Source: Ruditapes philippinarum
Taxonomy: Eukaryota
Direction: 5' to 3'
Length of the DNA: 64,000 nucleotides
NCBI RefSeq assembly: GCF_026571515.1
Contig: NW_026865813.1
Span: 124,001-188,000, forward strand
Below, one piece after another: positions 143 through 34,800 of this stretch (its first letter is position 1; every line of letters starts with the position of its first letter). The position numbers and the translations under genes were made by a program. Under the pieces are notes generated by a model. The model was not told where the DNA came from. It saw only the letters and a program-made list of their open reading frames with translations, and did no database searches.

Positions 143-3100
143 CAGTATATTTGCCATGTTCTCCCAAGAGATGACCACAGAAACATTTGGACATGTCATT
201 CACCCGTTGACAGTCATGTTTGAAATCAGGACATCTCCATCCAATATAAATACCTGCAAAACATACAAGGAAAATTTAAACAAAGAATGTCATGTAGTGC
301 AGGATTTTTCTTGCATGCCTTATAATTTTGCAGTTTGAAAACAAGAAATTTGACTGCTAGTGTAACTAAAATCATTTCATAACAAGAAGAAACAAATATT
401 CTGTCTCATCCGGAATGGATAAATCAATACAAGAGCCTACATTGTTACAGTCACAAGCAGATAGATCTATGGACTTAATATAAAACATGCTTGATAACTT
501 TATGACATGAGTAACTGAGATGTAAATGGCGGGGTTGTATCCAATCTACAAAGTAATTGAATTTGTTCAAGAACATTGCTGTTTTTTTATTTGCAGTTTG
601 GCTTCAAGTCGTACAGTACCAACACTGGTATGGTTATATGAAAACAACAATTTATCAAGCATTTATCCAAATCAATATCTAAGATTTTATCCAAACAAGA
701 GTAAAACCACCAATCTATAACTTTGCTAGATTGCCATGTCACATCAAGTTCAATAAAACTTGAGGTTTTAAACCCCACAGTGTAGAGGGACACATGATTC
801 AAAGTCATCAGGTTAAGCCATATATGCCACTAAAAAGATAATTACCTGTCTGTTGTGCCCTGACAGCTGCTTCTGTTTCTGGATCAAAGAGTTGTTTCAA
901 CCGTGGAGCAAAATCTGGGTTCATAGCACGTGCAAATGATTCCACATCATAGTTTTTGGCCGGTTCAATTTTCCTCATTGTATATCCTGTTACAGACAAA
1001 TAAAATAATTCAGCCGACTCAGAAATTATTCAAAATAATTCAAATACATGTATATTTCTTTTATTTTCTGTGACATAATTGTGTTGTTTCCAAAGTTACA
1101 TTTAAGTTCAAGTATAAATTAATTTTTACATTGATCATGTACTGTTAGGTCACCTAACAACCTCTTTGGTTGTATATAAATGAACAAATGATAAAATCAT
1201 AAATTTTTAATCTGTTCCTTTTGTTTACAAGCATCAAAACTGTAAGTACTTATCTGGATGTGTTTATTAAAATAATAAATTAATGAACCCAACCTTACTA
1301 AAAATCAAGTACATGTACATGTATTCATAAAGTTGTATTGAAAAATTGCATTCAAAACAGAATTAAAACTAATACTCAAAGAACCAATCACATTGCTCTC
1401 AGAAAATATCTACATTATAAATAGATATAAGCAAGGAAAGCAATACATACTTATGCAAATTATAATAAAATTAATGTATCATGTTAACACATGATACTTC
1501 TAAATGCAAAACAAACCCTCAGGTACAAGCATTCCATCCTGTTTTTTCATTGCAATAGGTCCAGGCATACCCTTGGGAACCATAGTTCCAGACCCTCTTG
1601 GGACTACAGCTTTACTTGAGGCAGCTCCAGGTGCTGGCTAAAAATAAACAATCATTACTGGCTAAAATAAACAATCACATTACTGGCTAAAATAAACAAT
1701 CACATTACTGGCTAGAAATAAACAATCATTACTGGCTAAAACTAGAACTGCCACTATCATGGCGTGAATACCCCCGCATACCACTTTGTCAGAATCAACA
1801 GTGGCCATTTAGAACTCAAGGACAACCACCCTGCCAAATCTGAGGTGACTAAGCCAGTGCATTGCTAAGTTATGTATTCTACATGCTTCAAATGTGAAAA
1901 TGTCAAAATCAATACACTCTGGACAGGCATTGGGGAAAAGCTTTATTTTGACAAGGTCCCTGTGACCTTGACCTTTGGCCTGGTGACCTCAAAATCAATA
2001 CGGATCATTTACTAATCATGACTAACCTCCATGCCAAATATAAAGACTGTGGGTCATAGGAACCTTAAGTTTTTGGGCGGACAAGCTTTTTGAAGTCAAG
2101 GCCCCTGTGACCTTGACCTTTGACCTGGTGACCTCAAAATCAATAGGGGTCATCTACTTATCATGACTAACCTCCATGCCAAATATGAAGACTGTGGGTC
2201 AAAGGAATCTTAAGTTATTGGGCGGACAAGCTTTTTGAAGTCAAGGCTCCTGTGACCTTTGACCTGGTGACCTCAAAATCGATAGGGGTCATCTACTTAT
2301 CATGACTAACCTCCATGCCAAATATGAAGACTGTGGGTCAAAGGAATCTTAAGTTATTGGGCGGAAAAGCTTTTTGAAGTCAAGGCCCCTGTGACCTTGA
2401 CCTTTGACCTTGTGACCTCAAAATCAGTAGGGGTCATCTGCTAATCATGACTAACCTCCATGCCAAATATGAAGACTGTGGGTCAAAGGAATCTTAAGTT
2501 ATTGGGCGGACAAACTTTTTGACGTCAAGGCCCCTGTGACCTTGGCCTTTGACCTGGTGACCTCAAAATTGATAGGGGTCATTTGCTTATCATGACTAAC
2601 CTCCATGCCAAATATGAAGACTGTGGGTCAAAGGAATCTTAAGTTATTGGGCGGACAAGCTTTTTGAAGTCAAGGCCCCTGTGACCTTGACCTTTGACCT
2701 GGTGACCTCAAAATCGATAGGGGTCATATACTTATCATGACTAACCTCCATGCCAAATATGAAGACTGTGGGTCAAAGGAATCTTAAGTTATTGGGCGGA
2801 CAAGCTTTTTGAAGTCAAGGCCCCTGTGACCTTGACCTCCATGCCAAATATGAAGACTGTGGGTCAAAGGAATCTTACGTTATTGGGCGGACAAGCTTTT
2901 TGAAGGCAAGGCCCCTGTGACCTTGACCTTTGACCTGGTGACCTCAAAATCAATAGGGGTCATCTACTTATCATGACTAACCTCCATGCCCAATATGAAG
3001 ATTGTGGGTCAAAGGAATCTTAAGTTATTGGGCGGACAAGAAAAAACCGACGGACGCCGGACGGCCAGACGGCCGGACGGACAATCTGATTCCAGTATAC

Positions 3101-3546
3101 CCCCCTTACAACTTTGTTGTGCGGGGGTATAATAAACAATTTTATTTGTACCGTAAATACCATTAAAAAACACTATATTATTTTTCCTTCCGTATATGTA
3201 CTAATTACATACATTGTATTTACTTTGGATACAAAAAGTCAATTAAAATATATTTTCCAAAACTGATTCATTTAAATGACTTTTGTGAACTAAAATTAAG
3301 AACATTGATCAAACTTATTATTTAAACTTCATTTTTTACAACAAATTATATGGTTACAGGGATTTCCTCTGCACAGAATTAAAACATATTAAAAGTTTTT
3401 TTTGTTTTCTTTTTTTCAAAATACAAAAATGTAATCTCTGTCTGTTTATCAATTTAATATAAAAGGTATCTAGACAGTAAGAAGTGCAGAATATTTACCT
3501 TTTTAGAGCCTACAGCCATCTTCCCTGTTGGTTGTTTCTTACTCAT
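143..3546 (-). CDS. FAM221B: FAM221B-like protein (DUF4475 family), 5' part; gene continues beyond position 1
   Basis: Coding exons 3546-3499, 1637-1517, 986-846 and 253-143, all GT-AG and phase-compatible. They give MSKKQPTGKMAVGSKK/PAPGAASSK...MLVPEG/YTMRKIEPAK...LFDPETEAAVRAQQTG/IYIGWRCPDFKHDCQRVNDMSKCFCGHLLGEH. GIYIGWRCP..DC.R....KCFCGHLL.EH is the FAM221B signature as I recall it. Confidence 0.88.
1635..1740 (-). repeat. ~24-bp tandem array (5 copies) containing the FAM221B exon acceptor
   Basis: ctggctaaa(a)ataaacaatca(ca)tta repeated. On the minus strand each unit is ...ttgtttatttTAG|CCAG. Confidence 0.9.
1741..3131 (+). mobile_element. Non-autonomous Helentron/HINE-type element with ~7.5 internal 145-bp repeats
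   Basis: 5' ACTAGA end; subterminal inverted repeat ATACCCCCGCA / TGCGGGGGTAT; 145-bp monomers (gaagactgtggg at 2326, 2471, 2761); GGAC-type microsatellite ~3048-3082; terminal palindrome. Confidence 0.8.
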
Positions 3547-3889
3547 CTTGTTTTTTCGTAATAATTAACCAATTAAGCTGTTAAGTTTTATTGTCGGAAC
3601 TACAAAACATGTATTTTAACTAAACGTTAAAAATCTTCATGACAAGATTTCTACTAAATAATTCATATGTATGTCAATTTTTTTTATCACTGTCCAAAAT
3701 GTTCATTGAACCATATCTGATGAATACAAAATTGTATTGAATGACTCAGTAAGAATAATATGAGCAATATGAAAGTTTTATTTAAAACCAGTAAAAGCTG
3801 CACTTGTTATTTAACTAAATAATTATTTTTTCCCTCTTACATTTCATTTTTATAGTATGATAGGAAAAAAAATTAGCAGTTTTTTTTTT

Positions 3890-4062
3890 CCACAGGTTGG
3901 GGAAGCAGCCCTGCCCTTAATTTTGGGGAAAAATTGCACAGTATATTGGCAAAAGGGGAAGAAAAACGTTGATGTAAATTCAATTTTTGGGGAAAACTGC
4001 ATGAATTTTTCTTTGGGGAAGCAGCCCTATAACAGCCCCAGCTATAGAAGAAAAAAGCCCTG
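3890..4062 (-). mobile_element. Small hAT-like MITE remnant
   Basis: CAGGGCTTTTTT end on the minus strand and repeated ttgggga motifs. Same style as elements at 4113-4877 and 41151-41489. Confidence 0.4.
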
Positions 4063-4277
4063 ATTAGACTAAACTATATATTGTATACATACAGTGATTT
4101 TCACCTTCTTTAACAGAGGCCTATAAAAAGCCTCTTCCCAATGGAAATTTTCTTTAAAAACATGCAATTTTCCCAAAAATCTTGTGCTAGCTTTTTTACT
4201 TCCCGAATTAGCAATTCTAATGATACTTTTTCCCCAAATTAAGAGGCTAAAGCCTCTTCCCAATTAACTTGAATTAA

Positions 4278-4854
4278 CCCTTTACCACATATATACGCGA
4301 AACAACGCACTTTCGACCCCCCCCCCCCCTTTTTTAGGCCTCAAATAGTGAAAAAATGTCCTATTTGGGCCCCCAACATAAGTTTTCGTTTGAGAAATGT
4401 AGCTTTAAAAATTGAGCACTTTTTCGGCGCCGCCCCCCATCCAAAAGATACATCAGGGGGTTGCCAGAAGGGGGATGTGCCAAGAAAATTTTGGACTTGT
4501 GAGAGGCTAAAAATGACCCCAGGTCGATCATAATGTAACGTTAAACCAACGCTGAAAAGCCTTTGACTCTATCTCAATCCCTTGAGCAGTTACAGCACTT
4601 TGAAATAAATTTTGATGGAAAAAATCGAGGCAAAATAGTGATTTTTGGCAATTTTGAGATGTCCCCTCGTTGCCATGGTAACAGGAAATTTAAGACTGAG
4701 CATGTCGTTACAAAGGCAATGGTCCAGTCAACATTGGTGCCAAGTTTGATTAGTTTTGAAGCATTTTTCATAGTTTCATAGCAGTTTGAACTTGTAACAG
4801 GAGGCTTTTCAGTGAAAACGGCCATTTTTCACAATATGCTAATGGGGGAAAGGG
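4278..4854. mobile_element. piggyBac-like MITE nested in an older MITE (~4113-4877)
   Basis: TTAA at 4274-4277 and 4855-4858; termini CCCTTT(A/C)CC...GG(G)GAAAGGG. Confidence 0.75.
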
Positions 4855-5118
4855 TTAAGTGAGAAAAAAATACCGACATAATTTTTATTTTGGACAGTAT
4901 CTCACTAGAAATGTAAGTGTGTACATGTATAATACAAGTTGTATTTCAGTTCACCTGTCAGGTGTCTTCTCTAAGAAGTTATAGTACATTTATGCTTCAT
5001 TTCAAAGTGCTATCCAATCATAAAACATGATACATGTGCACTATTTTTTGATAGCCTTTAAATTATCTCACCCCTTTTTTACTTCAGCTGTTCTTGGCAT
5101 ATTAATAAGAATTTACTT

Positions 5119-6183
5119 AATTGACCTTTTCGAAAACCTAGCTAAACACCGTTTTCCGGTACGTTACGGATTTAGCTCTGGGGAATTAGACCAAATGAAG
5201 TACATAACACAGTTACATGATATTTCTATCATTATTTTACCGTTTAAGGTGAAAAAAATTGATGTATTTGAAAATTATCAATATTCCTTTAATATCTATT
5301 GCAAATTTTTCAAAAAATAAATTGTTTATAATAAAAATCAAAATGAAAATTAAAATCAGTTAACATTTACATGTACATTGAAACTTAGTAGATAGATATT
5401 TTGTTCTTAACGATTAACTGGGTCTGTACAAATCATTTTTTCAAGACTTGTTCTGGGTTTTCAATTCTAAAATATAATCCAAGTATTTCCAGACTGGTTC
5501 TGGACAGGAAGAATTAATTACTGTTCAGAACAAACATCCAAGTGGTTCAAAACTGGTTATGTCACTGTTCCTGCTACTCCACCTCCTTTGCCAGACAGAA
5601 AAAATTGTCCAGTACACTGGGATTGGGTTCTGATTTCTGGACCACAATTCACGAATTCGAAAACCTAGCTAAACGCCGTTTTCCGGTACTTTCTGAACAT
5701 AGCTCTGGGGAATTCACCTAATGGAGTGTAATAGCGAACTCGATGTTTTCGGCCTTTTTTTAAAAATTAAATGGAAATAAAACAGTTATTTCTTTATAAG
5801 AAAATAATTGAATATCATTGTATGAATAATTCAATACAAAAAAAATAAGTACACAAGTTTACGCAGAAAATAACCTTATTTATTATGGAAGATTCCACTA
5901 CGTCAGTTTAAATTTTACTGATTTTCATTATAAACAATTTATTTTTTACAAAAATTTGCAATAGATATTACAGGAATCTCGAACATACGATACGTACATC
6001 CCAGCAGGAATATTGATAATTTTCAAAAACATCAATTTTTTTCACCTTAATCGGTAAAATAACGATAGAAAAATAGAAATATCATGTAACTGTGTTATGT
6101 ACTTCATTTGGTGTAATTCCCCAGAGCTAAATCCGCAACGTACCGGAAAACGGTGTTTAGCTAGGTTTTCGAAAAGGTCAATT
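5119..6183. mobile_element. Foldback/MITE-like element with ~220-bp inverted arms
   Basis: 5119-5340 (aattgaccttttcgaaaacctagctaaacaccgttttccggtacg...) is the reverse complement of ~5919-6183. A third partial arm copy sits at ~5657-5723. Confidence 0.85.
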
Positions 6184-6553
6184 CGTGCAGACCCTGGAGA
6201 TTTATTTCAAAATATCTTTTTGATTGACAACACAATTACCCAGCTTTGTTTTTCGACTAACACTGTTTATCCTTAATACTGTTTTTTTCATGACAGTGCC
6301 TCCAAATCAAAATCTTAATTCAGGAGAATTAAGAGTAGAAGTATAATATTATTTGTAGTTAGCTAATTCGGTACGAATTGATTTAGGGACGAGTTGACTG
6401 CATTAATATAATTTTAATGCCTGACACTTGTTAAGGTCGATTCTAAAACTATTCTCGTTCAAATAATAAAATAGAAAATTAAATAAAAGTTTGCTAGCAT
6501 GATATTTTCTTCTTTTTTTCAATAAAAACTAGAGATCTATCATAACATTTCAC

Positions 6554-9600: not shown

Positions 9601-12600
9601 ATTGAAACATCAGCTAGAGAAGATAAGTCATATGGTGAAAAGATTCCACAAGGAATTGAGAGACGTCCAACCAACGCCTGAATGTAAGACATAGATAATA
9701 TTGAGTTTTTTTATGGATTGTAAAATAAAGGGATATCATTATTGTTTATACACCATTTCCTAAATAATGAATTACATAAAAAATGGTAAAGTTGAAATAA
9801 AAACTTTTTCAATTTCAAGTTTTAATCATGTTTTAATTGGTATGTTAAAAGAGCATATTTGTAGATTTAATTTAATATGAATGTAGGTAATAGTGTTTCA
9901 AAATTAGTTTCTCTAGAGTCTACATGATTTTGTTTTGAAATGAAAAATTTAGCCACCATGTAAGTAGTGGTTTTATTTGAAAATGACACTGACTAAGTTC
10001 ATATGCATGTTAGTTTTAGGAATGTACATGTGTTGAGTTCTGAAACTATTAATTAATTTATTTACCAGTATTTAAAGTTGAAATATGATAGCATTATTTT
10101 ATTAATTTATTTACAAGTATTTAAAGTTGAAATTGGATCGCATTATTTAAACACCACCAAAATATTGATACCAAATGTTATTGGAAATATTAAAAATGAT
10201 TCCTAAAGTTACTGTAAACACAGCATATAAACAAGTCTACTTTTTGTTTTGTAAAAAGGAAACAAGTTAAAATATATAGGCTCCTAAGAAAGGTACAGTG
10301 ATTGGAAGTAACAGGAGCTAGACATGAAGCATAGATAATTGTATAGGCTTGGAAGACATGGTACAGTGATTTGTTTATCCACTGCAGTAAGTTGACAACG
10401 GTTTTTTCATGTAAAAGATAAAAACACATATTTACAGTATATGTCATATTAAAGTAATATATTTTGATTGTTAGTTGTAGAGAGGTTGAAAGTGATTATG
10501 GAGGAGATAGAAGGAACTATCAATGCATTTAAAGATCAACAAAGAAAGCAGTAAGATCTTTTACAAAATTTTTGTTGTTGGTTTTTTTATGGCTTCTTTC
10601 ATAAGAAATAGTAAATTGGTTATATTACGTTATGCCTAAAATTATTCTCCGTAATAAATGGATTTTTAATTGAACTCATTCATTTCTAGGACAGTTTTAA
10701 ATGACTTTGCTAAAAAATATATGCCATGTTGAGACATTGAGGTTAACTTAGAGTTTAAACAAATCTCTGGATTTATTATTACTGCAGACTTATTATCCTT
10801 GATACAGGTTTTTTCTCAAAGGTTTTTGCTGAGTTTAGATGATTACTCTAATAGATATTCTAAATTAAAAGATTGGGAGGGGGGGGGTGGCAACACATCA
10901 AAATACCAGGTCGGTTTATGTATTTATTATAACTATTGGTTTCGAGAACTATATACCCTTCTTCAGGTTAAATATAAATTCTGTCATACAAAACATGACA
11001 TATTCTACTGATGTTTTACAGTGAATTGATAAAATATCTTTTAATACTACATGTATGTGTCAACTTTGCTACATCTCTCCTGTTTCTACTTTAAAACATT
11101 GATAGTTTGACATATACGTTTTGTATAATGTATTGGTTATATGTAGTGTGATACTTATAATAAAAAGTTATAAAATAAAAAATTCATTTGCTTTTTTCAT
11201 TTCATTGTATTTTTCAATTGAATATAGCATTCTACTGTACATATTATGACTATTATATTAGACCTTCTTGTTTTAAGGTATGAATCTATGTTACTAGAGG
11301 AAAGGACTTCTTGGCTGGAGATTCAAGCTTTAGAAAAAAAGTTTGATTCCTGGTCACAGATAGGGAATGATAGTACACTGACCAAAAGAAACACAAGTGC
11401 TAGTAAACCACTTGCTAGTGCTAGAGATATTACAAAAGATCTGCCACCAGAAGTTGCAGCATTTGAGGTATGTTAATATGATTGGTCTTTTTTTCCAAGT
11501 TATTGTAAATTCGGTTAAAAAAATTACATTCATCAAGGCTAAACACTTGCTGTTTATTTTCTCAGGCAAAAGGCTTGTTTCCACCCCACCCCCATTTTGA
11601 AATGATAAATTTCTAATTTTAATAAGTTTTTAAATAAAAATCAGAAGAAGGAGACATAAGTATTTTTGTAAAAGGCAGAATACCTTTTTGTGGAATTCTA
11701 AAAATCATGAAAATGGGCATAATTAATCTTTGTTATTTAGGTATAACAATACAAAAGTTAAAGTTAACCACTTACAGAATTTAATATTTAAATTATTGGT
11801 ACCAATTTGCATGAATGCCAGAGACTTTACAAGCTTCAATTGTAATGTTTCACTTTGTCTTGACTTTGATTTTAAATCTTAATTGCTATCACCTAAAGTT
11901 GTTTCATCTCTTAATATAACAGATATTTACGAAATTTATTGATGGTTATTGCCAACTTAAGTTAGGTTTGGTTTGAATAGATTACTATATTCACTAATTT
12001 TACGACCTGATTTCAGAAATTTGTGGAGCAAAATGGTGGTGTGCGAGGTGGCTGGGATGAATATGATCATCAAACTTTCCTGAAATTTAGACAGCGCTAT
12101 CAGGTTTGTGAAATAGTTATTTTTGAAATATATAAAGGGCTTCTAGGTTTGTTTAATCATTTCTGAAACACTGAAAGCACTGTCAGGTTGTTCCTTGGTT
12201 TCTAAAAAAATCTTTAAATACTTAATACTATTTATTATTGTAAGGTAAACCTGTTTTCTGTCTATTTATTATTGTAGGGTAACCTTGTTTTCTGTCTATT
12301 ATTGTAGGGTAAACCTGTTTTCTTCCATTTACATTTAAAGATTAAACCTGTCATCAGTCTATTTATTTTTGCAGGGTAAACCTATTTTATTCCATTTATA
12401 ATTAATTGTTAACCTGTTTTCTTTCTATTTATAATTTTAGGGTAAACCTGTTTTCTTGCAACATTTACTGCCAGCATTACCAACAAGGACAGAAGAGGAG
12501 ATAAATTCACATGAAGAATGGTACCAAGAGTATTTGTTCCTGAATGAAACAAAGAAAGAAGCTATTAAAAGATGGCGCGAAAGAAAAGAGGTATGTATGT

Positions 12601-15600
12601 ATTAAATGATATGAGCTGTACTGAAATAGCTGTCATTGTTAGCTCGACTATTCGCAGAATAATCGAGCTAATGCAGTCACCAATTTGTCAGCGTCGGCAT
12701 CCCTGTGGTTAAGTTTTTGCGTGTAAGCTGGTATCTCCATAACTACTGAAGGGAATGGATTGAAACTTCACACACTTGTACTCTGCAATTATCTAACATG
12801 ACTGGCACAAGTCCCATAACTCTGATTTGCTTTTTTGCATAATTATGCCCCATTTTCGACTTAGAAATTCTTGGTTAAGTTTTTGCATGTAAGCTGGTAT
12901 CTCCATAACTACTGAAGGGAATGGATTGAAACTTCACACACTTGTTCTCTGTGATTATCTAACATGATTGGCACAAGTCCCATAACTCTGATTTGCTTTT
13001 TTGCATAATTATGCCCCTTTTTCGACTTAGAAATTCTTGGTTAAGTTTTTGCGTGTAAGCTGGTATCTCCATAACTACTGAAGGGAATGGATTGAAACTT
13101 CACACACTTGTTCTCTGTGATTATCTTACATGATTGGCACAAGTCCCATAACTCTTGATTTGATTTTTTTTTCATAATTATGCCCCTTTTTCGGCTTAGA
13201 AATTCTTGGTAAAGGTTTTGCTTGTAAGCTGGTATCTCCATAACTACTGAAGGGTTTGTGCCTTTTTTGGGACAATTTTATGCATTCATAATAATAAAGC
13301 AGTGATTTACTCGATAAAACATCTTAATAACAAGCCTTTGTACCTTTTCGGACAATTTTATGTATTCATATAGGTAAGCATTATTATACTCGATGAAACA
13401 CCCTTGTGACAACTTTGTGTCGAGCATAACTGTCCTCCAACAGTTCTTGTTATTTTAATAGGAGGAAATACAGGAGAGATTATTGATTCAAACAAAATTT
13501 GGCCTGTTTCAAGAGGTCAAGATTACAGGAAACAAATACCTTTGTAACATTTTTGATTCCGTTTTTTGTTTATGGGCAATATCTTCAGTAGTGATGCTGT
13601 AAGGAGGATGTGTCTTTATGAATTCTGCAAGTGACAAAAATTTGTCATCATTTTAAAAATTTACAGTTAACTATCCATTACTGAGTAAGTGGGATATGTT
13701 GCTTTTTTAGCTTGACTATTCGATAAGAATAAGTAGAGCTATTGCAGTCACCCGAGCGTCGGCGTCGGCGTAACCACTTATGTTAAAGTTTTTGTAATAG
13801 TTCAAATATTTTCAAAGTCCATTGACATATGGCTTTGAAACTTTGCACACTTGTTCACCATCATGACCCCAACCTGTAGACAGGAGGAGGTAACTCTATC
13901 AAGCATTTTGACAGAATTATGCCCCTTTTTCGACTTAGAATTTACGTTAAAGTTTTTGTAATAGTTCAAATATTTTCAAAGTCCATTGACATATGGCTTT
14001 GAAACTTTGCACACTTGTTCACCATCATGACCCCAACCTGTAGACAGGAGGAGGTAACTCTACCAAGCATTTTGACAGAATTATGCCCCTTTTTCGACTT
14101 AGAATTTACGTTAAAGTTTTTGTAATAGTTCAAATATTTTCAAAGTCCATAGACATATGGCTTTGAAACTTTGCACACTTGTTCAACATCATGACCCCAA
14201 CCTGTAGACAGCAGGAGGTAACTCTATTAAGCATTTTGACAGAATTATGCCCCTTTTTCGACTTAGAATTTACGTTAAAGTTTTTGTAATAGTTCAAATA
14301 TTTTCAAAGTCCATTGACATATGGCTTTGAAACTTTGCACACTTGTTCACCATCATGACCCCAACCTGTAAACAGGAGGAGGTAACTGTATCAGGCATTT
14401 TTTTTTACTATCAAGCACTAAGAATAGTCGAGCATGCTGTCCTACCGACAGCTCTTGTTAACAACTCTTGTTTAAAAATATTTGATTTGAAGGTACTACA
14501 AATGTATATTTTATTAAACTCTTCCAAATGTGAAGTTCAAGGTCATATTATGAACTGCATATAGGTCTAGTTTTCTATTATTTTATAAGCTTGTTATAAT
14601 TTTATTCCAGGAAGAGAAAGAAGAGTTACTTGCAAAGGCTGGGGAGGAACCAGAAGAAAAACCTGATGTAAAACAAGAAATGTTAAAGGCCCAGATAGAG
14701 AAAGAAAGAATGGAAAGAAAGTCTCATCTTAACGCATATAAAGTACAGAAAGAACTGGAGAGGGCACAAAAGGAGGAGAGAAAGTTACGAGAACAACTAG
14801 ATGAACAAAAGAAAAAACAGGAATGGAAAAGGAGACAGGTCTGTTGAATATGGAGCACTTGTATTATATAGAGCACTTGTGAATACTAGTTACTGGTTCT
14901 AATTAATATAGAAATGTTTTTAGTAGTGCCGAAATTGTCTAGGTCATGAAATCCTTATGATTTTTTTAGAACATATGAAAAAATCAACTCTAATTTTAGT
15001 TTAATAGTCAAATGTTTTAAGATTAATAAAAATTTGAAAAGATCAGGTGTGTGATTTAAGTTTAAAGTTTTCTGTAATTTAAAGAAAATTAGTTCATTAC
15101 TGACACATCTACAAAGACACTGCTTGCATATTTTGATATGCAAAGCAGCATGATAAAGTATACCTTTTCTTGGCTCTTGGCTTTGCGTTTTACATTTTCT
15201 TAACCTCGTTTCAATTTATTATCATACTGGTTTCCTTATTTGGAAAATAATAGTTTTCCGTAATGTGAAGATTTTCTGTACAGATTATAATATTTTAGTA
15301 ATTTTTTGTTTTTTAAAGATTAAATAAACTATGGGGTTATGGTTGTTGATTTCAAACCACTCACTGATCATCGTCACAGGTTTGAATTCTGCCATAGACT
15401 TTGGATTCTTTTGTGTGTGGAAGCTATCCAACAAGCTTACAGAGAGTTGATAGTTCTACTCCAGTGCCTTCTTATGCCTGGAATAATACACGGTGGGGCA
15501 CCTGAGGTCTTCCTCCACCAGTTAATCTGGTAAAGTGGCCATTTGGCCTTTAGTGTTGATGTGACGTAAAACCCAAACAACAACATTAAAAGCTATCAAA

Positions 15601-23815: not shown

Positions 23816-25250
23816 AACAAGAGCTGTCGGTAGGACAGCATGCTCGACTATTCTAAGTGCTTGATAGTAAAAGAGCCTAATGTTCAATTTTTTAAGTTCA
23901 CAAAAGGGCTAATTTTTTTTATAAATTCATGTTTTAGGCCTTTGTCTAATTATACAGTATTGGCTTGACTATTCGGAAGGTAATGTCACAAGGGTGTTTT
24001 ATTGAGTATAATAATACTAATTACCTATGAATACATAAATTTGACAGAAATGGTACAAAGGCTTGTTATTAAGATGTTTTATGCAGTAAATCACTGCTTT
24101 ATTATTATGAATCCATAAAATTGTCCCAAAAAAGGCACAAACCCTTCAGTAGTTATTGAGAAAACAGCTTACAAGCAAAACTTTACCATGAATTTCTAAG
24201 TTGAAAAAGGGGAGAAAAATCAGCCTAAATGCAAGATAGAATTATGGATCTTTGTCAGTGACCTACAATTATGACCCTAAATGCATATGTGAAGTTTTAA
24301 ATAAATATCTTTAAAAGTTATTGAGATATGTAAAACTTGCATGTAAACATTAACCAAGAGACTAAGTAGAAAAGGGGATATGAATCAGCCTTAATGCAAG
24401 ATAGAGTTATGGAACTTGGTCAGTGACATACAATTATGACCCTCCAATTATGACCCTAATTGCATGTGTAAAGTTTCAAGTAAATATCTTTGAAGACCTT
24501 TAACCAAAATTTCTAAGTTTCAAAGGGGCAAATAATTCTGCAAATATTGCTGGCAGAGTTATGCAATTTTGCAAACTGATGTACATTGTTACTATGAAAA
24601 AGTGTTTTAAATTTCAATTGAATATCTCAAGCAATAATTGAGATATTTGACTTTACAAAAAAACTTTAACCAAAATTTCTAAGTTCCAAAGGGGCATAAT
24701 TCTGTCAATATTGTAGGCAGAGTTATCCAACTTGTCAATCTGATGAACCTTGTTACTATAAATAAGTATTGTAAGTTTCAATTGAATATCTCAAGCAATA
24801 ATTGAGATATTTGACTTTACAAAAAACTTTAACCAAAATTTCTAAGTTAAAAAGGGCCATAATTCTGTCAATATTGTAGGCAGAGTTATCCAACTTGTCA
24901 ATCTGATGTACCTTGTTACTATAAATAAGTATTGTAAGTTTCAATTGAATATCTCAAGCAATAATTGAGATATTTGACTTTACAAAAAAACTTTAACCAA
25001 AATTTCTAAGTTAAAAAGGGGCATAATTCTGTCAATATTGTAGGCAGAGTTATCCAACTTGTCAATCTGATGTATATTGTTACTATAAATAAGTATTGTA
25101 AGTTTCAATTGAATATCTCAAGTAATAATTGAGATATTTGACTTTACAAAAAACTTTAACCAACGCAGACGCCGACGCGGACGCTGACGCCGACGCCGAC
25201 GCCGGGGCGACTACAATAGCTCTCATATTCTTCGAATAGTCGAGCTAAAA
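23816..25250 (+). mobile_element. Composite HINE-type element containing several monomer types (last four ~164 bp)
   Basis: The 5' end is the reverse complement of 14405-14459. 23985-24160 is the reverse complement of ~13240-13412. It ends in (gacgcc)n and the palindrome agctctcatattcttcgaatagtcgagct. Confidence 0.85.
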
Positions 25251-25314: not shown

Positions 25315-25451
25315 GGGATTTTGTCCGGGTAGGTAAGGGGATTTTTTCCAGCCTTGCAAAAACATGAAGGGGATTATGTCCACCCATGGAGGGGATTTTG
25401 TCCGGGTATGCGAAGGGGACTTTATCCGAAGGGGGATTATGTCCGTACACC
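25315..25451 (+). repeat. Short-period GGGGATTTTGTCC array, probably subterminal repeats of a DNA transposon remnant
   Basis: About 6 copies of ggggatt(t/a)tgtcc ending in gtacacc. Confidence 0.5.
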
Positions 25452-25888
25452 GATACAACATATACTTGAAATAAATGTAAGGAAATAACTGTCATGAAAG
25501 GAATGACTGACATATAAATACGAATTTCATTACGCACAGCAAATACCATGACATGTATTAAATATACAAATATATGTTGAATAAATTCCTTTTAATGCTT
25601 CAATTGTAAACTAAATAAAAATATAAAAACATACTGTAACTTGTTATCTTTCTCAAATGTACAAAAACGACTATCAAAGCAGCCTTATTTTTGTTTCTTA
25701 GTAAGTTTTCTCAGAGTTGAAAAATTATGAAGTAATCTCCTGGGTGAATTCTGTAGGTGCATGACCTAGAGATAAATTCTATACACTCGTGTGACCTGGA
25801 TGATTCTGCAACATCACTGTGGCATGGATAAATTTTGTACCCTCATGTGGCCTGGATAGATTCTGTATACTCGAGTGATCCTTAATTT

Positions 25889-28800
25889 TCATTTCCAGGA
25901 GAGAAGAACAAAGTTTCTTGGTGAAAGTTCTGGGTCAAATACTGGCACTAAAGCACTTACATGTCCTGAAAAAGATTTCAAATGCATTATTTTTGACAGT
26001 AAATATAACAGGAATTTGAAATGAACTTAATTTCAACAAATGAAGAAATGTAAATCAAAACAAAATGTACAGAATTTTATATACAAATGTACAAAAGAAC
26101 CTAGAAAACTCATTTAAGTAAATTAAATCCCTGGGAGGTCTATTTAGTCAAAAAAGGGGCCTATACCAATCAACTGAATAAATAAAGGCAGAGGGTGGGG
26201 CTAGGCACTTTAATAAAAGAGATAAAAAAAATTCAATCAGCCATTTTTTATACAAGTATGTATATCAGTCATATGCATTTATAAAATTTTGGGATTATTC
26301 TTATGGGGAAAACTAACAAAATCTAACCAGATGTTTAAGACCAACACATTTAAACACAATTTATTACTGACAGCAAATATAAGCCAATCTCAAACAACTG
26401 AAAATAATTTTAGAACTATCACATAAAAACTTAAATTTGTGCATGGCCGAGTGGTCAACACGTCAGATTAGTAATCTAATGATCGCAGCCTCATAGGTCC
26501 AAACCTCGTCAGGGGAAAGTTTGTTTCCTTGAGCAAAAACTTTACACTTATTGCTCAGTATGGTTGGTTCCAGGAACAGATTCAAAAGTGTGTCTATAAG
26601 CTTATAGCTTCCTACACAATCAAATCAAATAAATCCTGTATGAAACAAATTTATCTAATATTTCTATAATCTGTACAATAAGTGTAACTATTAGAAGAAT
26701 GTTCTACAAATATTTCTTACTTCTACCTTTTTCAAATAAGAACATCATCCTGTCAAGAAGGACTAGTGTTTCTACAACAGGGGCTAAAGCAAGACGTATT
26801 GTATAAAATGCCACCACATCTTTCCATCTCTCTGTCATTCTTTCTGCTTGATGGAATAACTCCTCTGTTAACTGGTCTTGTGGAATATTCAGTTTTTGTA
26901 GACCAAGTTCAACATATCTGTTTGAGCAAAAAAAATACAAGAATAAACATTGGACCAAATTTATTTCAATGTAACAAACCGATATATCTTAGAATATCTA
27001 CTAGAACATCGTTCTTCTATAACAGTTATACTTTATTCTTGCATAAAAACTGCTCATGCAGGTATACATCAACAGAAAAGAAAACATGAATAAACAGATA
27101 GATTCTTGTGTCCATGTGCTGTTGTTGCATTGTTTTGTTAAATGAGACTAAGGGCCACATATCAAAAAGCTTAATGCAATAATGACCCCAGTAGTTGTTG
27201 TATTTTTGTTTTTGATAAGCATGACTAAAACAGCTTAATGAAATAACAGCCCCAGTAGTTTTTGGTTTCAAGTCATAACTAAACTATCAAGGTCCTATGG
27301 CTAACTTTAATTTTTGAGGATGAGAAAAGCCCTCCAGTAACCTTTCCATCCTTTTATTCACAATGGGCACCTACATGTATGTAGGACAAAAACCCTGAGA
27401 TAGCTGCAGCTTAAACATTCTGACAAAATAGAATTTCAACATTCCTGATAGATCTAGACTTTTAACTCAAAGCAGTTATGGGCAAGTACAATAATTCAAA
27501 ATTTGTAACCTTATAAAATCAGTTATGAAGGTCCCTAAATTGATAAATGTATATTAGTTTATCAGAATCATCCATACTTTTCAAACTGTAGATCTTTCAT
27601 CTTCCTTGAGGGTATTTGCACTGCAGTTCTTTTAAAATCTGGACATAATTTATTGGCAATCCATTCAAGAGCAGCTCGGTAGCTGTGAATCTTCAACAAA
27701 GGTGGACTTTCTGAAATTTAAGAAATCTTGGTGAATAAAACAAATACATCTTACCAGAATAGAAGTTATTTGAGAAATATTTTGGTTGTTGCTAAAGTAT
27801 GTGAATACATATACATGTACTAACACTGAAAAGAAAAAAAAACAACTAGAAATACATGTATGCTCACATGACATTTATTCCCCACTCTACATTTGGTGTC
27901 ACATTGCATGTGAACATACTTATGCATATTTTAAGTGTTATATTTAATTAAAACATAATATACATATATGATGATATTATCATTAGTAAGTTTCAAAAAG
28001 GGTCTGACCGAAACAAGGCGGTGATATGCACATCTCCTCATGGTATTGAAGGAATCCATAAAGTTTAATTGAATTACAGCCAGTAGTAGCAGAGAAGTAG
28101 CCCAGAAACAATTATTGCTCTATATGCATACTGTATAACTAATCAAGGGCCATAACTCTAAGTTATATTTTATATTTTCATAATCTGAAGACATGCTACT
28201 TACCTACAGGTACCTTTAAAACATTATCTTAGTCCTCAAAAACCTACCTTTTAATCTCTGTGAATATGTATCAGCAAAGTGACAAGCCAATTCCCTGCTG
28301 GCATAAGATTGCTGGTGATGAGGTAATGATATACAGAAATTACTCATTGGATAACCAACCATACCAGTCTCACAACTGTTAATGAAATAAATATAAAAGT
28401 TATTATAACTTATTATGACTAAGCAAGGACTTATCAAGGACAAATCATGCTAAACTAGGTATATTTAAGATATTTGCTGACACAGATGAAAACTGTATAT
28501 AAATCAAATAAAATGTTCCAGAACATAATATGATGCTGCTATTTCAAGAAAAATTTTAACTGATAAGCAATGATTTTCTGCATGCACCTTTAGATGAAAA
28601 GGAAATGTAACAACATATTTCTTTAATACAGGCATTTTGGAATTACATGTATTTTCTTTTCAAAAATTCAATCAAAAATTGTGTAAACGGCAGGCAGCAG
28701 ATGTTTAGCTTTATTCACTTTAAATATTACTAAATACAGAACAAGCTCTGCGGGACAACACCCTTCGCGAGACAAAGATTTTGGTTGCTGCATAGAGGTG

Positions 28801-31800
28801 TTGTTCTGGTGCGGTCAAACTTATTGTGAAGCCTTACTTTTGGAAAAAATGACTGTTGTACAGAGGTGATTTCTCTACAGAGGTCCACTCTGTCGAGATT
28901 GTACTGTAATTACTACTTTATAGAATAATACCTTTCATCTGATATCTTCATATAACAACAGCCAACTGATGCCAAACCAACTGCTGCTTGGCAATTAACA
29001 AAGAATCGTAGAAATGTGGGTGTCAGATCACCACATGCATGTAACCCCGTCAGCATAAACTTCCAGTTGTCAACATCAAGATGACCTGTGACCTCTGACT
29101 TACAAGCAACAGAATAATCTTGACCGGTACTTAGCTGTGTATTATGCCGGCTTTTGAAATCATTGTCATCAAATGGATTCACACAACTGTCACATCCTTC
29201 AGTAGTCGTTTCCACAGAATTACACGATAAAACATGGTCATTCTTTATATCACATTTTATTGATTGAGTTTTTGATTTTTCATTTTCATTAAAGTTTGAC
29301 TTAGATGTTGTATCACTTATAGTAACAATGTTTGACTGAGTAACAGATTCTGAACAGTTTTCTAACTTCAAACAACCATCTTGTGCAATTTGTGATTCAA
29401 CTTTAGCATATTTGATATCTTTAATTCCTTCAAGTAACTGACTGTTATCCTGTGTTCTTTTATTACATTCATTTAAACGATTGATCATTTCATGATGAAC
29501 TGGTTCATTGTTGGATTCTAAATCATCACAGCTGGCATCATCTGGTTCATTCTTATGGTCAATCCTTAATGCAAGATCTTTATTGGTGACATCATAAGCA
29601 CATACCCTGTTTATTTCTGAGTCTTTATCTCTGACATTCATAGAGTTTGACACAAAAGGTTGTCTAATAGTTTCAGTGTCATAATTTTCCTGACATTGTG
29701 ACGTTATTATGGCTATAAATTCCTCGGCAGTCATGTTAGGGTAAATCATGCTCGTCACGTGGCATGGAAGAGGAACCTGTTCACTACTTTTCCCTTTAGC
29801 AGCCTGAAAAAGATATTTTACAACAAATCCCCTATTTTACTCTATAAATGCTAGGCATAATAAGGATTAACCTACACTACCAGTTTAGAGCCAGGATACG
29901 TGTTCACTAAGTGGGGTTGAGGAGGGGTAGGTTAATCAGGCTATAAATTATGAGCTATCCATTGTTAAAGATCCTGTAACACATTTTTTTCATGGTTTTA
30001 TTTCATGATATGATGCTCAAATTAAGATATTTCAATATTGTAAGTTCCAATAAGCATTATTTACAAAGATATTACCCAATTTAACATTTCATGTAAATAA
30101 AGGGAGGTAATTAGAAATTTATTTTCTATAAATTCTAAGTCAAATTTTCCAATAAGAAATGAATGCATGTAATTTATTGATTAAATATAATGTGCACAAA
30201 TATTTGCAGTACACATTTTACATATTCTTCGATGTTTGAAAATTGTTTTATTTGCATAATTATAAACATATATAATTTTTTGCAAGTGTGGTATACACAC
30301 TTATGCTCGCCCATATGGTCTCTTTTCGGTGGCGAGGGTAAACAAACCCAAACACACACACGTATACACACAGTAACAATATCAATCACAAAACATACAG
30401 GATCTTTAATATAAAGGATTTTAATATATACAGCAGAAGACAACACTGCATGATTCATTAACAAAAGAAATAAAAACACTTGAATATAGATTATTCAAAA
30501 ATTTATTATAATTCACACTACCAAAAAAAAAAACAACAACAAACAATCAAAAGTGATTTCTTGAATAAATTATGAAATATGACATAACAATATCAGAATA
30601 AATATTTCACCGGTTTGTAGAAATAGATATGCAAAAAGTGTAACACAATTATTACTTACCAATATTTTCTTTTTTATCTCTCTATCAATTTCCCTGAAAT
30701 ATTAAACTGCTGAAGTATACTTGCACTTCAAGCACAAATTTTTTTTAATTGACTCTTTAACTCTTAATATAAGCATGTTTACGGTGAAAATGCAATATGA
30801 CATTTAACTATATCGTCTTACAGCAATTCAACTACATTATTATTATCTACAGACAAGCTTGAACAACTGAGAGGTCTTACCAGAGTTTATACTGTTCATG
30901 TTGGCTGCTAAAAATTAGTATTTTGTCTTGTGTATTTAGTCTCGCGATCTATTACCGACTGAGATATGCGGGCTGGCTATTAAATTGGCAACATATAGTA
31001 AATAACTTTTTGCAACAGAAATTATGCACTGTAGCTTACCTGTCATATTTGGTGGCTTTAGGTGCATGTGTCCCTGCAGCCTCTACAGATGTTACGTTCA
31101 AGTTGTAGCCAAATGACAGCAACCTAGCCAGATGTCCTAGACCTGAACCCACATCAACAACATTCTTACAATCAATATGCTGGCTTAACATATACACAAC
31201 CTGGCATAAAAATAATATGCTGACTTAACATATACACAACCTGGCATAAAAACAATATGCTACCTTAACATATACACAACCTGGCATAAAAACAATATGC
31301 TGGCTTAACATATACACAACCTGGCATAAAAACAATATGCTGGCTTAACATATACACAACCTGGCATAAAAACAATATGCTGGCTTAACATATACACAAC
31401 CTGGCATAAAAACAATATGCTTGCTTAATACAGTTGACTCTCGGTAACTCGAAATCCAAGGGACTAGGTATTTTACTTCGAGAGAAACGGAATTCGAGTA
31501 ACGTGGGACTATCGCCATTACGTTGACTTCGTACATGTATATACATGTACCTGATTGAATGTGCAAAGAAGTAGGTTTCTTATTGTTGTTAGCGGCAATG
31601 CTGCAATATTTAACCATTGAAATGACGGTAAATCACTTTCAACTACAAATTATAAATGAACAAAAATATATCATTCAAAATTTAATACATGTATATTAAT
31701 AGTGAAACATAAAACACACAATTATATTTGATTTAATTGATCATCGGACGAAAACGAAATTAGCAACTATCGTGAACCGGAAGTACAAAATTAATGTTTG

Positions 31801-34800
31801 CAATATGACGGAACATTAATTATACAAATATCATTTACGTTGATAATACACATCAATACCTAGGCTGTTATTTGACTAGGCTGTTATTTGACTAACACCC
31901 GTCAGACTGGCACGAGTAAACTTTTTTAAAGAAATGTAATTAAATTTTAATTTAGTTATCTAATTGTTAAAAACCAATTAAGTCGTGAAACGGATTAAAG
32001 ACACTTACTTTTACGACGTGTTAATAATACATGATGACCGGCAATTAAAAATTACTATGAAACGTGTAAATCACGAGTGACAACATCTCACCTTGATGTC
32101 GCCGACCTTTGATCAGTCGGCTGTTTTCACCACTTCGACTAATTGAGATGAAAAATATGTGGACTTTAATTGACGGGACCAAATTTTCTTTTCGACTAAA
32201 CAGGAGTCTCGGTAAGTCAAAATTTGACCTAAGCGGAGTTAAAATACAAAGATAAAGAAGGAAATTTGACGGGACTTTAGAAATTATTCGACTAAGGCGG
32301 AATTTTGAGTAAAGCGATTTTGACTTATTGAGAGTCAACTGTATATACACAACCTGGTATAAAAAAACAATATGCTGGCTTAACATATACACAACCTGGT
32401 ATAAAAGCAATATGCTGGCTTAACATATACACAACCTGGCATAAAAATAATATGCTACCTTAACATATACAACAACCTGACATAAAAATAATATGCTACC
32501 TTAAGATATACACAACCTGGCATAAAAACAATATGCTTGCTTAACATATACTCAACCTGACATAAAAATAATATGCTACCTTAACATATACACAACCTGG
32601 CATAAAATCAATATGCTGGCTTAACATATACACAACCTGGCATAAAAACAATATGCTACCTTAACATATACACAACCTGGCATAAAATCAATATGCTGGC
32701 TTAACATATACACAACCTGGCATAAAAAATATTATGCTACCTTAACATATACACAATCTGGCATAAAAACAGTATGCAGACTTAAGATATACACAACCTG
32801 GCATAAAAACAATATGCTGGCTGAACATATACACAACCTGACATGCAAACAATATGCTGACTTAACATATACCGTAATAATTCTATTTAGCGCCCATCCT
32901 CTAATAGACGCCCACCCCCCATATTTTGGACAAAAAACGGCCATTTTTCAGCCCAAAGTTGAAAAATTAACTGTCCCTTTTAAACGCCCATTCCCCGATT
33001 TGAGTACAATTGAGCTTACCTTTACAATTCAAGTTTCCTTATTTCCATTTTCACGTAGGAACGAACTTCCCTTTTCTTGTCTTTTTTTCCGTAAAGTTTA
33101 TATGTACACAGTATTTCAATGCCACCACCTTTTACAAAAGTTCCTTTTGATGATGAACGCGGTTCTCCAAGTATTTTGGCACTGATTTCTACAATAAGTC
33201 CATCTTTGAATAACTTTGTAAGAGGCTGACATAATCCCTCCGGTACTGTATATGTCCAACAAGAAATCCATTTATTTTTTACGATAATTGCGCTATCACT
33301 ATGTTCATTTTCTGGTTCCAAATTACACTGAAGTATAGTTCCGACTGGGCATGTATATTTGTAAACGTGATATCCCTTAATAACAGATTTTAATAGACAC
33401 AAGCATAGGGTTTGCCATAATTCAATGTGTTTTGTGTATAAGATATATATACATGTATAAAAAAATAACCATTCCGAGATGCCAAAAACTCACGCGCCTA
33501 TTTCATTACGTCAGCAAGGTCAACGTGCGGGTTCAATGTATTGGGGCCCAACATGGAGATTAGTTCTGATTAAAAATTAATTTTGAACAATAGACGATAG
33601 TCTTTTTATATCAAAATCCCACATCAATCCTTTAAGAACATATATGCTTGTGTCAGTAAAATCGGTCAGAACTATTCTTAACTTTTTATATCTTACAATT
33701 ATATTGGTGGGTATAAAAAAATGCATAATGATCGGACTCGAAATATTCCATTGACTTTTGAATTGTATAGAACATCCCCAGATTACAGAGTTAATTGGTA
33801 CCTTTACATAATATTTCGTTGGGAAAAATCATAATATTTTTGCAGGCTCATTTTTTATTCCCCTTGCTCGGATACCGGACTCTACATGCATCGGTATTAT
33901 AAGTGCGGAAAAAGAACAGACTTTAGCCGGTACGTTACGATACCGAAATCCGACTTTAGCGTTGTCTGCAATTATAAATCAACATCCGCTCTATCTTCGG
34001 ATTCGATTTCTTCTTATAGTTATGAGGGGCGAGTGGATTTATAAAGCCTTGCTTAGAAAATTAGTTTGTCTTATGAAGATGCGTCTCCAATTAACGCCCA
34101 TCCCCAACTTTCGAAAAGTCTATGATTATAATAAAAGCCCGGGCGCTAAATAGAATTATTACGGTACATGTGTACACAACCTTGCATAAAAACAATATAT
34201 ATACCGATTGAGCATTCATACAGCCTGGGCTTAAAACATATAAGATGGCTCTATGTCAGTTGGTACTCTGGTTATAAATTAAAACAATGCCATTTATCAA
34301 GGTCATCTTGACTAACTTACTAAGTCAAAGAGTTTCTACACAATAAGAGCAATCATCTATTGAAATTTGCTGACTCTCTGTTTAATTAATGTCATATAAT
34401 AATCATAATCATAATACTGTTTGGAAAACAGTTTTCACATAAAAAAATTCTGTAACTTTGACCTATCATACCCAAAAACCTGCTGGGTCTAGCTACCTAC
34501 TAAAAAACTTGGTAATCTTCCTATGAAGTTTGAAGACACAGTGTTCTCTCCAGTTATCCATTGAAATAAAATGCTCTAATGATTAACTGACTGAGAACAA
34601 ACATTTGCAGAACAATCCCGCCTCTTCTAAATCATTATGCACAATTGTCTTTCTATAAATAAATTACATTTATCTTCACTTTTACTCCTGACATACTTTT
34701 ACTACAAACTAACTTTATTCCTTAAAAACAAACCTTTGCCAAGTTTTTAATTTCATGCCGTTTCTTTGGTTTCACGTGTTTCTTGAAAAAAGCATGTAGC

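What the first reader, a model, noticed from the sequence alone, without database searches (positions are those of the whole stretch)
1635..34199. Recurrent tandem amplification of splice acceptors: three genes carry arrays of decoy 3' splice sites
Seen: three unrelated minisatellites have a unit made of the last intron bases, AG and the first exon bases. They are in FAM221B (1635-1740, ~24 bp x5), CCDC112 (12229-12456, ~33 bp x~7) and METTL25B (31174-34199, 40 bp x~20). In each case the array extends into the intron and only the 3'-most copy gives the conserved protein. The decoys I translated all hit a stop. Established: AG choice normally favours the first suitable AG after the branch point, and tandem duplication across AG|GT is a proposed intron-gain route. 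Inference: three of the five spliced genes in 64 kb is more than I would expect by chance. It suggests either a mutational process focused on acceptors or a copy-number-tunable route to NMD. I know of no description of this as a genome-wide system.
Basis: partly seen in the sequence, partly recalled or inferred. Interest (0 to 1): 0.82.

Follow-up and report, generated by a model that had tools for sequence, protein, structure and literature searches.

The report
Splice-acceptor minisatellites in three bivalve genes
Three neighbouring genes of a bivalve-like genome each carry a short tandem repeat built from the end of an intron plus the start of the next exon; such repeats are already known from amphioxus as 'mirages', and nothing here shows that the extra splice sites are used or regulated.

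Summary
The sequence observation holds. Three unrelated minisatellites found only at their own loci (25 bp x4.4, 33-34 bp x6.9, 40 bp x~20) each end on the 3' splice site of a real coding exon. The genes are FAM221-type, CCDC112-like and METTL25B. Every unit copies the pyrimidine tract, the AG and 4, 17 or 28 exon bases, and every upstream copy I translated runs into a stop.

The system-level reading is not supported. This kind of repeat is already described: 'mirage' minisatellites at both kinds of exon-intron boundary in amphioxus, and the human F7 IVS7 repeat at a donor. In both, the extra sites stay silent. Other first readers' unchecked notes on this same genome list donor arrays about as often as acceptor arrays.

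Three of four minisatellites at acceptors is nominally rare under uniform placement (about 1e-5 to 2e-4 per window). After allowing for the 802 windows read, and given at most two doubtful cases in the 200 kb around the window, chance is not excluded. RNA coverage was too low to see any junction. The genome-wide test could not be run.

Most likely these are tolerated tandem duplications that straddled an acceptor and then expanded. This would be the first bivalve case in the literature I could search. Interest is moderate.

The parts
1634..1741 (-). Array A1: 24-25 bp x4.4. The gene-sense unit is CCAGTAATG(TG)ATTGTTTATTTTAG. It holds four decoy TAG|CCAG acceptors plus the real one.
   Evidence: TRF; sequence; decoy table; unique in the genome
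1517..1637 (-). FAM221-type exon (PAPGAASSKAVVPRGSGTMVPKGMPGPIAMKKQDGMLVPE+G). The acceptor AG is at 1638-1639 and the donor is GAGG|GTTTGT. An in-frame TAG lies directly upstream.
   Evidence: The exon is phase-compatible with the next exon. BLASTP to FAM221 orthologue P0084 gives KAVVPRGSGTMVPKG against RTVVPKSKGLLAPKG, which in P0084 directly precedes YTMR.
846..986 (-). Next FAM221-type exon (G)YTMRKIEPAKNYDVESFARAMNPDFAPRLKQLFDPETEAAVRAQQT. Further exons lie at 138-257 and beyond the window's left edge.
   Evidence: P0084 and P0102 hit Pfam FAM221. tblastn maps the exons.
12017..12103 (+). CCDC112-like exon KFVEQNGGVRGGWDEYDHQTFLKFRQRYQ. It ends in phase 0, with donor CAG|gtttgt.
12228..12457 (+). 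Array A2: 33-34 bp x6.9, unit ctatttattattgtag|GGTAAACCTGTTTTCT. Five decoy AGs are kept. The copy next to the real site has lost its AG and reads TTAAC 29 nt upstream of the real AG. The array fills most of a 337-nt intron (12104-12440).
   Evidence: TRF. The intron is AG-free from 12375 to 12438. Unique in the genome.
12441..12590 (+). CCDC112-like exon GKPVFLQHLLPALPTRTEEEINSHEEWYQEYLFLNETKKEAIKRWRERKE. The real acceptor AG is at 12439-12440.
   Evidence: Exon-level ORFs of relatives keep (L)QGKPVFL at the same start and show no unit-like sequence upstream.
31173..31428 (-). Array A3, exon-proximal block: 40 bp x6.4. The gene-sense unit is tttttatgccag|GTTGTGTATATGTTAAGCCAGCATATTG.
   Evidence: TRF; found only at this locus
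31040..31200 (-). METTL25B exon VVYMLSQHIDCKNVVDVGSGLGHLARLLSFGYNLNVTSVEAAGTHAPKATKYD (SAM-binding motif I). The real acceptor AG is at 31201-31202. A second in-frame AG lies at 31180-31181.
   Evidence: Pfam Methyltransf_32. The upstream exon ends in phase 0. Relatives keep V(I/V)Y.LSQ. Relative contig L025 has ttacag|GTTATACAC at the same place.
31429..32342 (.). Transposon with terminal inverted repeats, inserted into array A3.
   Evidence: Inverted repeat arms 31428-31456 and 32316-32344; sequence
32343..32872 (-). Array A3, distal block: 40 bp x13.1, with a 241-bp higher-order period.
   Evidence: TRF; decoy table
32873..34165 (.). Second transposon with terminal inverted repeats, inserted into array A3.
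   Evidence: Inverted repeat arms 32865-32895 and 34141-34171, 97% complementary
34166..34199 (-). Last, degenerate copy of the A3 unit, beyond the second transposon.
34734..34813 (-). METTL25B upstream exon ...DNGELHAFFKKHVKPKKRHEIKNLAK. Its donor is AAG|gtttgt, phase 0.

Best explanation
These are three independent 'mirage'-type minisatellites, each found only at its own locus.

Inferred origin: in each gene a short tandem duplication of 25-40 bp happened to straddle a 3' splice site. It copied the pyrimidine tract, the AG and the first 4-28 exon bases. Slippage or unequal exchange then expanded it upstream into the intron.

Why this would be tolerated: only the copy contiguous with the rest of the exon can give an open frame. 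All other copies lie inside the intron and are removed with it. Each unit is a self-contained branch-site-like, pyrimidine-tract and AG module. The choice among identical acceptors must therefore come from the exon side, through exon definition by the downstream 5' splice site and exonic enhancers. Rare use of a decoy would give a premature stop and be cleared by NMD.

Shown: the arrays, their uniqueness in the genome, their exact relation to real exons, stops after every decoy, and the absence of the A3 array in a relative.

Inferred: the mutational route, the silence of the decoys and the neutrality of the arrays.
For: - The arrays are real and each is unique in the genome. They are therefore local duplications and not a dispersed satellite or transposon family.
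- The direction of copying is clear. The A2 unit carries codons for the conserved GKPVF. The A3 unit carries 28 bases of the conserved V(V/I)Y.LSQ segment.
- A relative with 72% identity in this exon has the same acceptor position and no array within about 430 nt upstream. The A3 array is thus a lineage-specific gain.
- The three arrays differ in age: 92%, 72% and 88-96% unit identity. A3 has taken two transposon insertions and shows a 6-unit higher-order period typical of unequal exchange.
- The splice site falls at 4/25, 17/33 and 28/40 of the unit, so no fixed register points to an AG-centred mechanism.
- All decoys give stops.
- In the known analogues the extra sites do not disturb splicing (PMC3087553, PMC3902484, PMC1557585).
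- The adjoining 200 kb shows no clear further case among 14 arrays.
Against: - Three of four minisatellites in one 64-kb window on acceptors is nominally improbable under uniform placement: 1e-5 to 2e-4 per window, or 0.01-0.16 expected among 802 windows. A real bias towards junctions cannot be dismissed.
- The silence of the decoys is not shown here. Depth over the CCDC112-like locus was 1-3 reads and no junction was seen.
- In A2 the decoy nearest the real site has lost its AG and gained a TTAAC. This could reflect selection against a competing site, so the array may not be strictly neutral.
Confidence: 0.6

Rival explanations
1. A real mutational bias. In this genome tandem duplications would arise or expand preferentially at exon-intron junctions, both donors and acceptors. 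Possible causes are transcription- or splicing-coupled fork stalling, or slippage in pyrimidine tracts. Junction minisatellites would then be enriched genome-wide without being functional.
For: - The window's cluster: 3 of 4 arrays, P of 1e-5 to 2e-4 per window.
- About 20 further unchecked first-reader notes of junction minisatellites in this same genome, and in no other genome of the scan under those words.
- The authors who described amphioxus mirages also suspected a more general phenomenon (PMC3087553).
Against: - The notes are unverified. Their number, about 20-25 in 802 windows, is below the 50-210 junction-spanning arrays that uniform placement would give for about 3,500 arrays.
- The adjoining 200 kb has at most 2 doubtful cases among 14 arrays.
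- The position of the junction within the unit is scattered.
- No genome-wide test could be run.
Confidence: 0.25
2. A regulatory decoy system. The acceptor arrays would divert a copy-number-dependent share of transcripts to stop-containing isoforms and NMD, tuning gene output.
For: Every decoy keeps a pyrimidine tract and an AG as good as the real site, and every decoy leads to a premature stop. Nothing else supports this reading.
Against: - No junction read supports decoy use (the coverage was too low to exclude it).
- The known analogues are silent (PMC3087553, PMC3902484, PMC1557585).
- The arrays differ in age and are decaying. A3 tolerated two transposon insertions.
- The A3 array is absent from a relative.
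- The three genes share no function.
Confidence: 0.06
3. Raw material for changes in gene structure, such as intron gain, intron sliding or alternative 3' splice sites, as proposed for amphioxus mirages. A unit could become a new exon, or the acceptor could shift.
For: - The A2 and A3 units formally begin with GT and end with AG (AG|GTAAAC, CAG|GTTGTG).
- A3 has two in-frame AGs 21 nt apart at the real exon.
- The model is set out in PMC3087553.
Against: All decoy-derived insertions carry stops. Units of 33-40 nt are probably too short to be spliced as introns, which is my inference. No isoform evidence exists.
Confidence: 0.05
4. An artefact: assembly error, or a dispersed satellite that merely abuts the exons.
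For: None specific. Highly heterozygous bivalve assemblies can contain errors.
Against: The units occur nowhere else in the genome. Copies have diverged and carry transposon insertions. The units contain conserved coding sequence of the adjacent exon.
Confidence: 0.02

Closest known systems
Amphioxus 'mirage' minisatellites: Adh3 (Canestro et al. 2002, NAR 30:2871, cited in PMC3087553), globins BflGb6/BflGb9 (PMC3087553), TnC and PGBD5 (PMC3902484)
   Same: - Minisatellite-like tandem duplications whose unit spans an exon-intron boundary.
- BflGb6 copies the 3' end of an intron plus the 5' part of the exon, exactly as here.
- The units carry AG/GT signals.
- The authentic copy sits at the edge of the array.
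- Unit sizes of 10-160 bp cover the 25-40 bp seen here.
- Turnover is by unequal exchange.
   Different: - The host is a mollusc-like genome, not a cephalochordate.
- Undisturbed splicing and length instability were shown in amphioxus and could not be tested here.
- Here there are three cases within 33 kb, one with about 20 copies and two transposon insertions.
Human F7 IVS7 37-bp VNTR, whose first unit spans the exon 7 donor (Borensztajn et al. 2006, PMC1557585)
   Same: A junction-spanning minisatellite gives a row of identical pseudo splice sites. These are functional in principle but normally silent, and the exon-proximal site is the one used.
   Different: It sits at the donor side, not the acceptor side. 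Its mechanism (5'-to-3' scanning for the first donor) was shown by mutagenesis. Nothing comparable is shown for the acceptor arrays here.
Intron gain by tandem duplication across AGGT (Rogers' model; potato RdRp case, PMC4974935)
   Same: A tandem duplication includes AG|GT, so that GT...AG-bounded units arise. The A2 and A3 units have this form.
   Different: In that model the duplication lies inside an exon and creates a new intron. Here it straddles an existing acceptor and only lengthens an existing intron.
NAGNAG and other tandem alternative acceptors
   Same: Several AGs compete at one exon start.
   Different: Those lie 3 nt apart, give in-frame isoforms and are not minisatellites. Here the spacing is 25-40 nt and every alternative leads to a stop.

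Membership tests
Mirage minisatellite (tandem repeat spanning an exon-intron boundary) | The repeat unit contains the end of the intron and the start of the exon, or the exon end plus the intron start | tested here: met
   A2 has 16-17 intron plus 17 exon bases. A3 has 12 intron plus 28 exon bases. A1 has 21 intron plus only 4 exon bases.
Mirage minisatellite (tandem repeat spanning an exon-intron boundary) | The authentic junction is the edge copy contiguous with the rest of the exon, and the other copies lie in the intron | tested here: met
   Only the exon-proximal copy keeps the frame. Exon starts are fixed by the phase of the upstream exon and by relatives.
Mirage minisatellite (tandem repeat spanning an exon-intron boundary) | Many units keep AG/GT signals that could act as cryptic sites | tested here: met
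   4 of 4 (A1), 5 of 6 (A2) and about 17 (A3) decoys keep the tract and the AG.
Mirage minisatellite (tandem repeat spanning an exon-intron boundary) | Regular splicing is not disturbed | tested here: inconclusive
   Four raw RNA runs gave a depth of 1-3 and no joint over 11100-12700.
Mirage minisatellite (tandem repeat spanning an exon-intron boundary) | Length instability between haplotypes or individuals | not tested
   No DNA reads were laid.
Dispersed satellite or transposon-derived array | The unit recurs at many loci in the genome | tested here: not met
   Each array matches only its own locus in 1.41 Gb.
Regulated poison-exon or NMD switch | The stop-containing isoform is produced, responds to NMD and is conserved | tested here: inconclusive
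   No junction reads. The A3 array is absent from a relative, which argues against conservation.
NAGNAG tandem acceptor | Alternative AGs 3 nt apart that give in-frame isoforms | tested here: not met
   The spacing is 25-40 nt and all alternatives give stops.

The most novel reading that the evidence does not exclude
Junction-spanning minisatellites, at both donors and acceptors, are enriched several-fold genome-wide in this bivalve, as suspected but never measured in amphioxus. This would reveal a tandem-duplication process focused on exon-intron junctions, for instance one coupled to transcription or splicing, in highly polymorphic marine invertebrates. It would also provide hundreds of natural experiments on how the spliceosome picks one of many identical sites.
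Probability: 0.25. Interest if true: 0.65.

Novelty: new member of a known kind. Interest (0 to 1): 0.36.

Why it matters
If these arrays are only tolerated duplications, they are still useful. They are natural constructs with 4 to about 18 sequence-identical 3' splice sites in a row. They could show how an acceptor is chosen when the sequence cannot decide, the mirror image of the human F7 donor model.

They also extend 'mirages' from cephalochordates to a mollusc-like genome. That hints that the phenomenon goes with minisatellite-rich, highly polymorphic genomes more than with one lineage.

For annotation the point is practical. Gene predictors can pick a decoy and truncate the protein.

A proven genome-wide excess at junctions would point to an unknown mutational mechanism.

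Tried and rejected
- RNA evidence. Depth was 1-3, mostly unspliced, with no joint, so nothing can be said on decoy use.
- Genome-wide enrichment test. Exon-centred loci from a kinase search could not be cut out either. The test was therefore not done.
The contigs of the relatives' ORFs P0028-P0030 could not be read. One relative's locus was reached instead through the metagenome scan.
- An annotation-free test based on the length of the open frame running outward from each array end does not separate exons from background in this AT-rich genome. I dropped it.
- The Pfam FAM221 search of the genome listed no hit on the window's contig, and Pfam and the protein atlas were blank for the window's FAM221-type exon. 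I rejected 'not FAM221' after the full protein search and tblastn mapped the gene across the window's left edge.
- For A3 I first took ccag|CATATTG (exon start 31179) as the acceptor. I rejected it in favour of 31200. Pfam scores could not decide between them.
- PDB search with the CCDC112-like exon gave nothing relevant.
- Two flank arrays (contig C14300 102511-102626 and 285854-285927) were examined as possible further junction cases. They are left as doubtful.
- Exons were searched one by one by reference.
Full report
**What is there**

- A1: 1634-1741, 25 bp x4.4, 92% matches.
- A2: 12228-12457, 33-34 bp x6.9, 72% matches.
- A3: 31173-31428 (40 bp x6.4, 96%) and 32343-32872 (x13.1, 88%, with a 241-bp higher-order period), plus a degenerate last copy near 34166-34199.

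A3 is interrupted by two elements with terminal inverted repeats. Their arms lie at 31428-31456/32316-32344 and at 32865-32895/34141-34171. The array is therefore older than both insertions.

The window is G000:C14300:124001-188000 of a 1.41-Gb assembly, and its GC content is 33%. Named relatives of its proteins are molluscan, from Saccostrea and Patella. Each array matches only its own locus in the whole genome. They are local duplications, not members of a dispersed satellite or transposon family.

**Are the neighbouring exons and acceptors real?**

I searched exon by exon, by reference.

A3 (METTL25B, minus strand):
- The exon carries the SAM-binding motif VVDVGSGLGHL and hits Pfam Methyltransf_32.
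- The large downstream exon finds METTL25B relatives.
- The upstream exon (34734-34813) ends ...KKRHEIKNLAK with donor AAG|gtttgt in phase 0.
- Two in-frame AGs are possible, giving an exon start at 31200 or at 31179.
- Relatives' ORFs keep V(I/V)Y.LSQ upstream of the second AG.
- A marine-metagenome contig from a relative (L025, 72% identity) reads ttacag|GTTATACAC...AATGTTGTGGACGTTGGATCTGGA at the homologous place.
- The real exon start is therefore 31200, and the unit is 12 intron bases plus 28 exon bases.
- L025 has no tandem repeat in the roughly 430 nt upstream of this exon. The array is a lineage-specific gain.

A2 (CCDC112-like, plus strand):
- The upstream exon 12017-12103 ends RQRYQ in phase 0.
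- The exon 12441-12590 begins GKPVF directly after an in-frame TAG whose AG is the acceptor.
- Exon-level ORFs from three other assemblies keep (L)QGKPVFL at the same start. What they read upstream is unlike the unit.
- The name CCDC112 rests on my memory of the human protein. No tool named it.
- The intron is only 337 nt, and 213 nt of it (12228-12440) are array.

A1 (FAM221-type, minus strand):
- Pfam and the atlas were blank for the window's exons, and the genome-wide FAM221 scan listed no hit on this contig.
- The full protein search with the next exon found proteins of 380-415 residues that hit Pfam FAM221.
- tblastn maps the gene across the window's left edge.
- The A1 exon (1517-1637) is phase-compatible with the next exon (...LVPE G|GA YTMRK).
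- Its KAVVPRGSGTMVPKG aligns with RTVVPKSKGLLAPKG, which precedes YTMR in orthologue P0084.
- The 5' end of the exon is inferred. An in-frame TAG sits directly upstream, and its AG follows the best pyrimidine tract.
- Only 4 exon bases (CCAG) are shared with the unit, which may be no more than slippage microhomology.

**Decoys**

Translated in the phase set by the upstream exon, every decoy runs into a stop.
- A1: after 3-7 codons.
- A2: after 8-23 codons.
- A3: after 6-116 codons for about 17 decoys.

The decoys' pyrimidine content equals that of the real sites.

In A2 the copy next to the real site has lost its AG. Its exon-derived part reads TTAAC 29 nt upstream of the real AG, and no AG lies between 12375 and 12438. 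In all three arrays the branch site of the real acceptor must lie in a copy of the unit. This last point is inference.

**Use of the decoys**

Four raw RNA-seq runs of the same species label were laid on 11100-12700. Depth was 1-3 reads, as high in the intron as in the exons, and no joint was reported. This says nothing either way.

**Is it more than chance?**

The window has four minisatellites with period 12-80 and at least 3 copies. Three end on acceptors.

With 40-60 acceptors in 64 kb and units of 25-40 nt, uniform placement gives 1.6-3.8% per array. That makes P(at least 3 of 4) about 1.5e-5 to 2e-4. This corresponds to 0.01-0.16 expected windows among the 802 read so far in this genome. 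It rises to about 1 if arrays arise only in the unique half of the sequence.

As an independent sample I fetched the 200 kb around the window. Fourteen further arrays were found. None shows a unit contiguous with a demonstrable exon, and two are doubtful.

Other first readers' notes on this genome, unchecked, include 8 titles with 'acceptor' and 'minisatellite' and 11 with 'donor' and 'minisatellite', among them MCM6, KTI12, PPT2 and KIZ. About 20-25 such notes in 802 windows is no more than the 50-210 that uniform placement would give for about 3,500 arrays. The near parity of donors and acceptors argues against an acceptor-specific process.

My conclusion is that the cluster is unusual, but an excess is not established.

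**What is known**

The kind is described.
- Ebner et al. [quoted passage not shown] One copies the 3' end of an intron plus the 5' part of exon 2.
- They cite Canestro et al. 2002 for Adh3, with units of 10-72 bp and somatic instability. They note that splicing is not disturbed, although many units hold AG/GT.
- Pavelitz et al. 2013 (PMC3902484) add PGBD5 and TnC.
- The human F7 IVS7 37-bp repeat spans the exon 7 donor. Its pseudo-sites are functional but silent (PMC1557585).
- My searches of the held library found no such report for molluscs.

**Verdict**

The idea of a new genome-wide system, focused on acceptors or tuned through NMD, is not supported. The most likely reading (0.6) is three independent, tolerated junction-straddling duplications that expanded: a bivalve instance of mirages. 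A real junction bias (0.25) remains the interesting open possibility. It needs the genome-wide overlap test and deep junction counts set out under next steps.

Noticed in passing
window 31429-32342 and 32873-34165: Two different elements with terminal inverted repeats (914 and 1293 bp) landed inside the same 40-bp array.
   Followed up: partly
window 12612-12700: RNA-seq depth jumps to about 200-280 reads where the 166-bp tandem element (12706-13254) begins. Many variant bases and loose ends are seen. This looks like transcripts of a dispersed repeat family, not of the CCDC112-like gene.
   Followed up: no
window 1952-3040, 12706-13254, 13778-14401, 24498-25163, 35208-36198, 53921-54719, 56694-57260: There are seven arrays with 137-170-bp units, probably transposon-associated satellites. 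They make up most of the window's tandem-repeat content and are unrelated to splice junctions.
   Followed up: no
contig C14300:111616-113153 (L013/L014, outside the window): A 30-bp x51.5 minisatellite whose unit is open in one frame (GDNAGDIIVN). I could not tell whether it is coding.
   Followed up: no
contig C14300:285740-285927 (L024, outside the window): A possible first coding exon (METATVESQQEMTGPEDVK, donor AAAAG|GTAAAT) is followed 14 nt into the intron by an 18-bp x4 array (AAATTTTACAATTTAGGA). The array is close to the donor but does not clearly include it.
   Followed up: partly
window 12228-12457 and 31173-32872: The A2 and A3 units formally begin with GT and end with AG (G|GTAAAC...TTGTAG; GTTGTG...ATGCCAG), so each internal unit looks like a 33-40-nt mini-intron.
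   Followed up: no
window 25771-25867: The fourth minisatellite of the window (28 bp x3.5, 70% matches) ends 29 nt before a good acceptor-like site (tttccag|GAGAG). It does not include that site, and no exon could be shown there.
   Followed up: partly
L025 3794-3988: The relative's METTL25B contig ends in a CT-rich 21/36-bp array with repeated CTCAG, about 640 nt downstream of the exon.
   Followed up: no
window 1517-1637: The FAM221-type exon seems to hold an internal duplication (VPRGSGTMVPKG / KKQDGMLVPEG) where orthologues have a single ...LLAPKG before YTMR.
   Followed up: no
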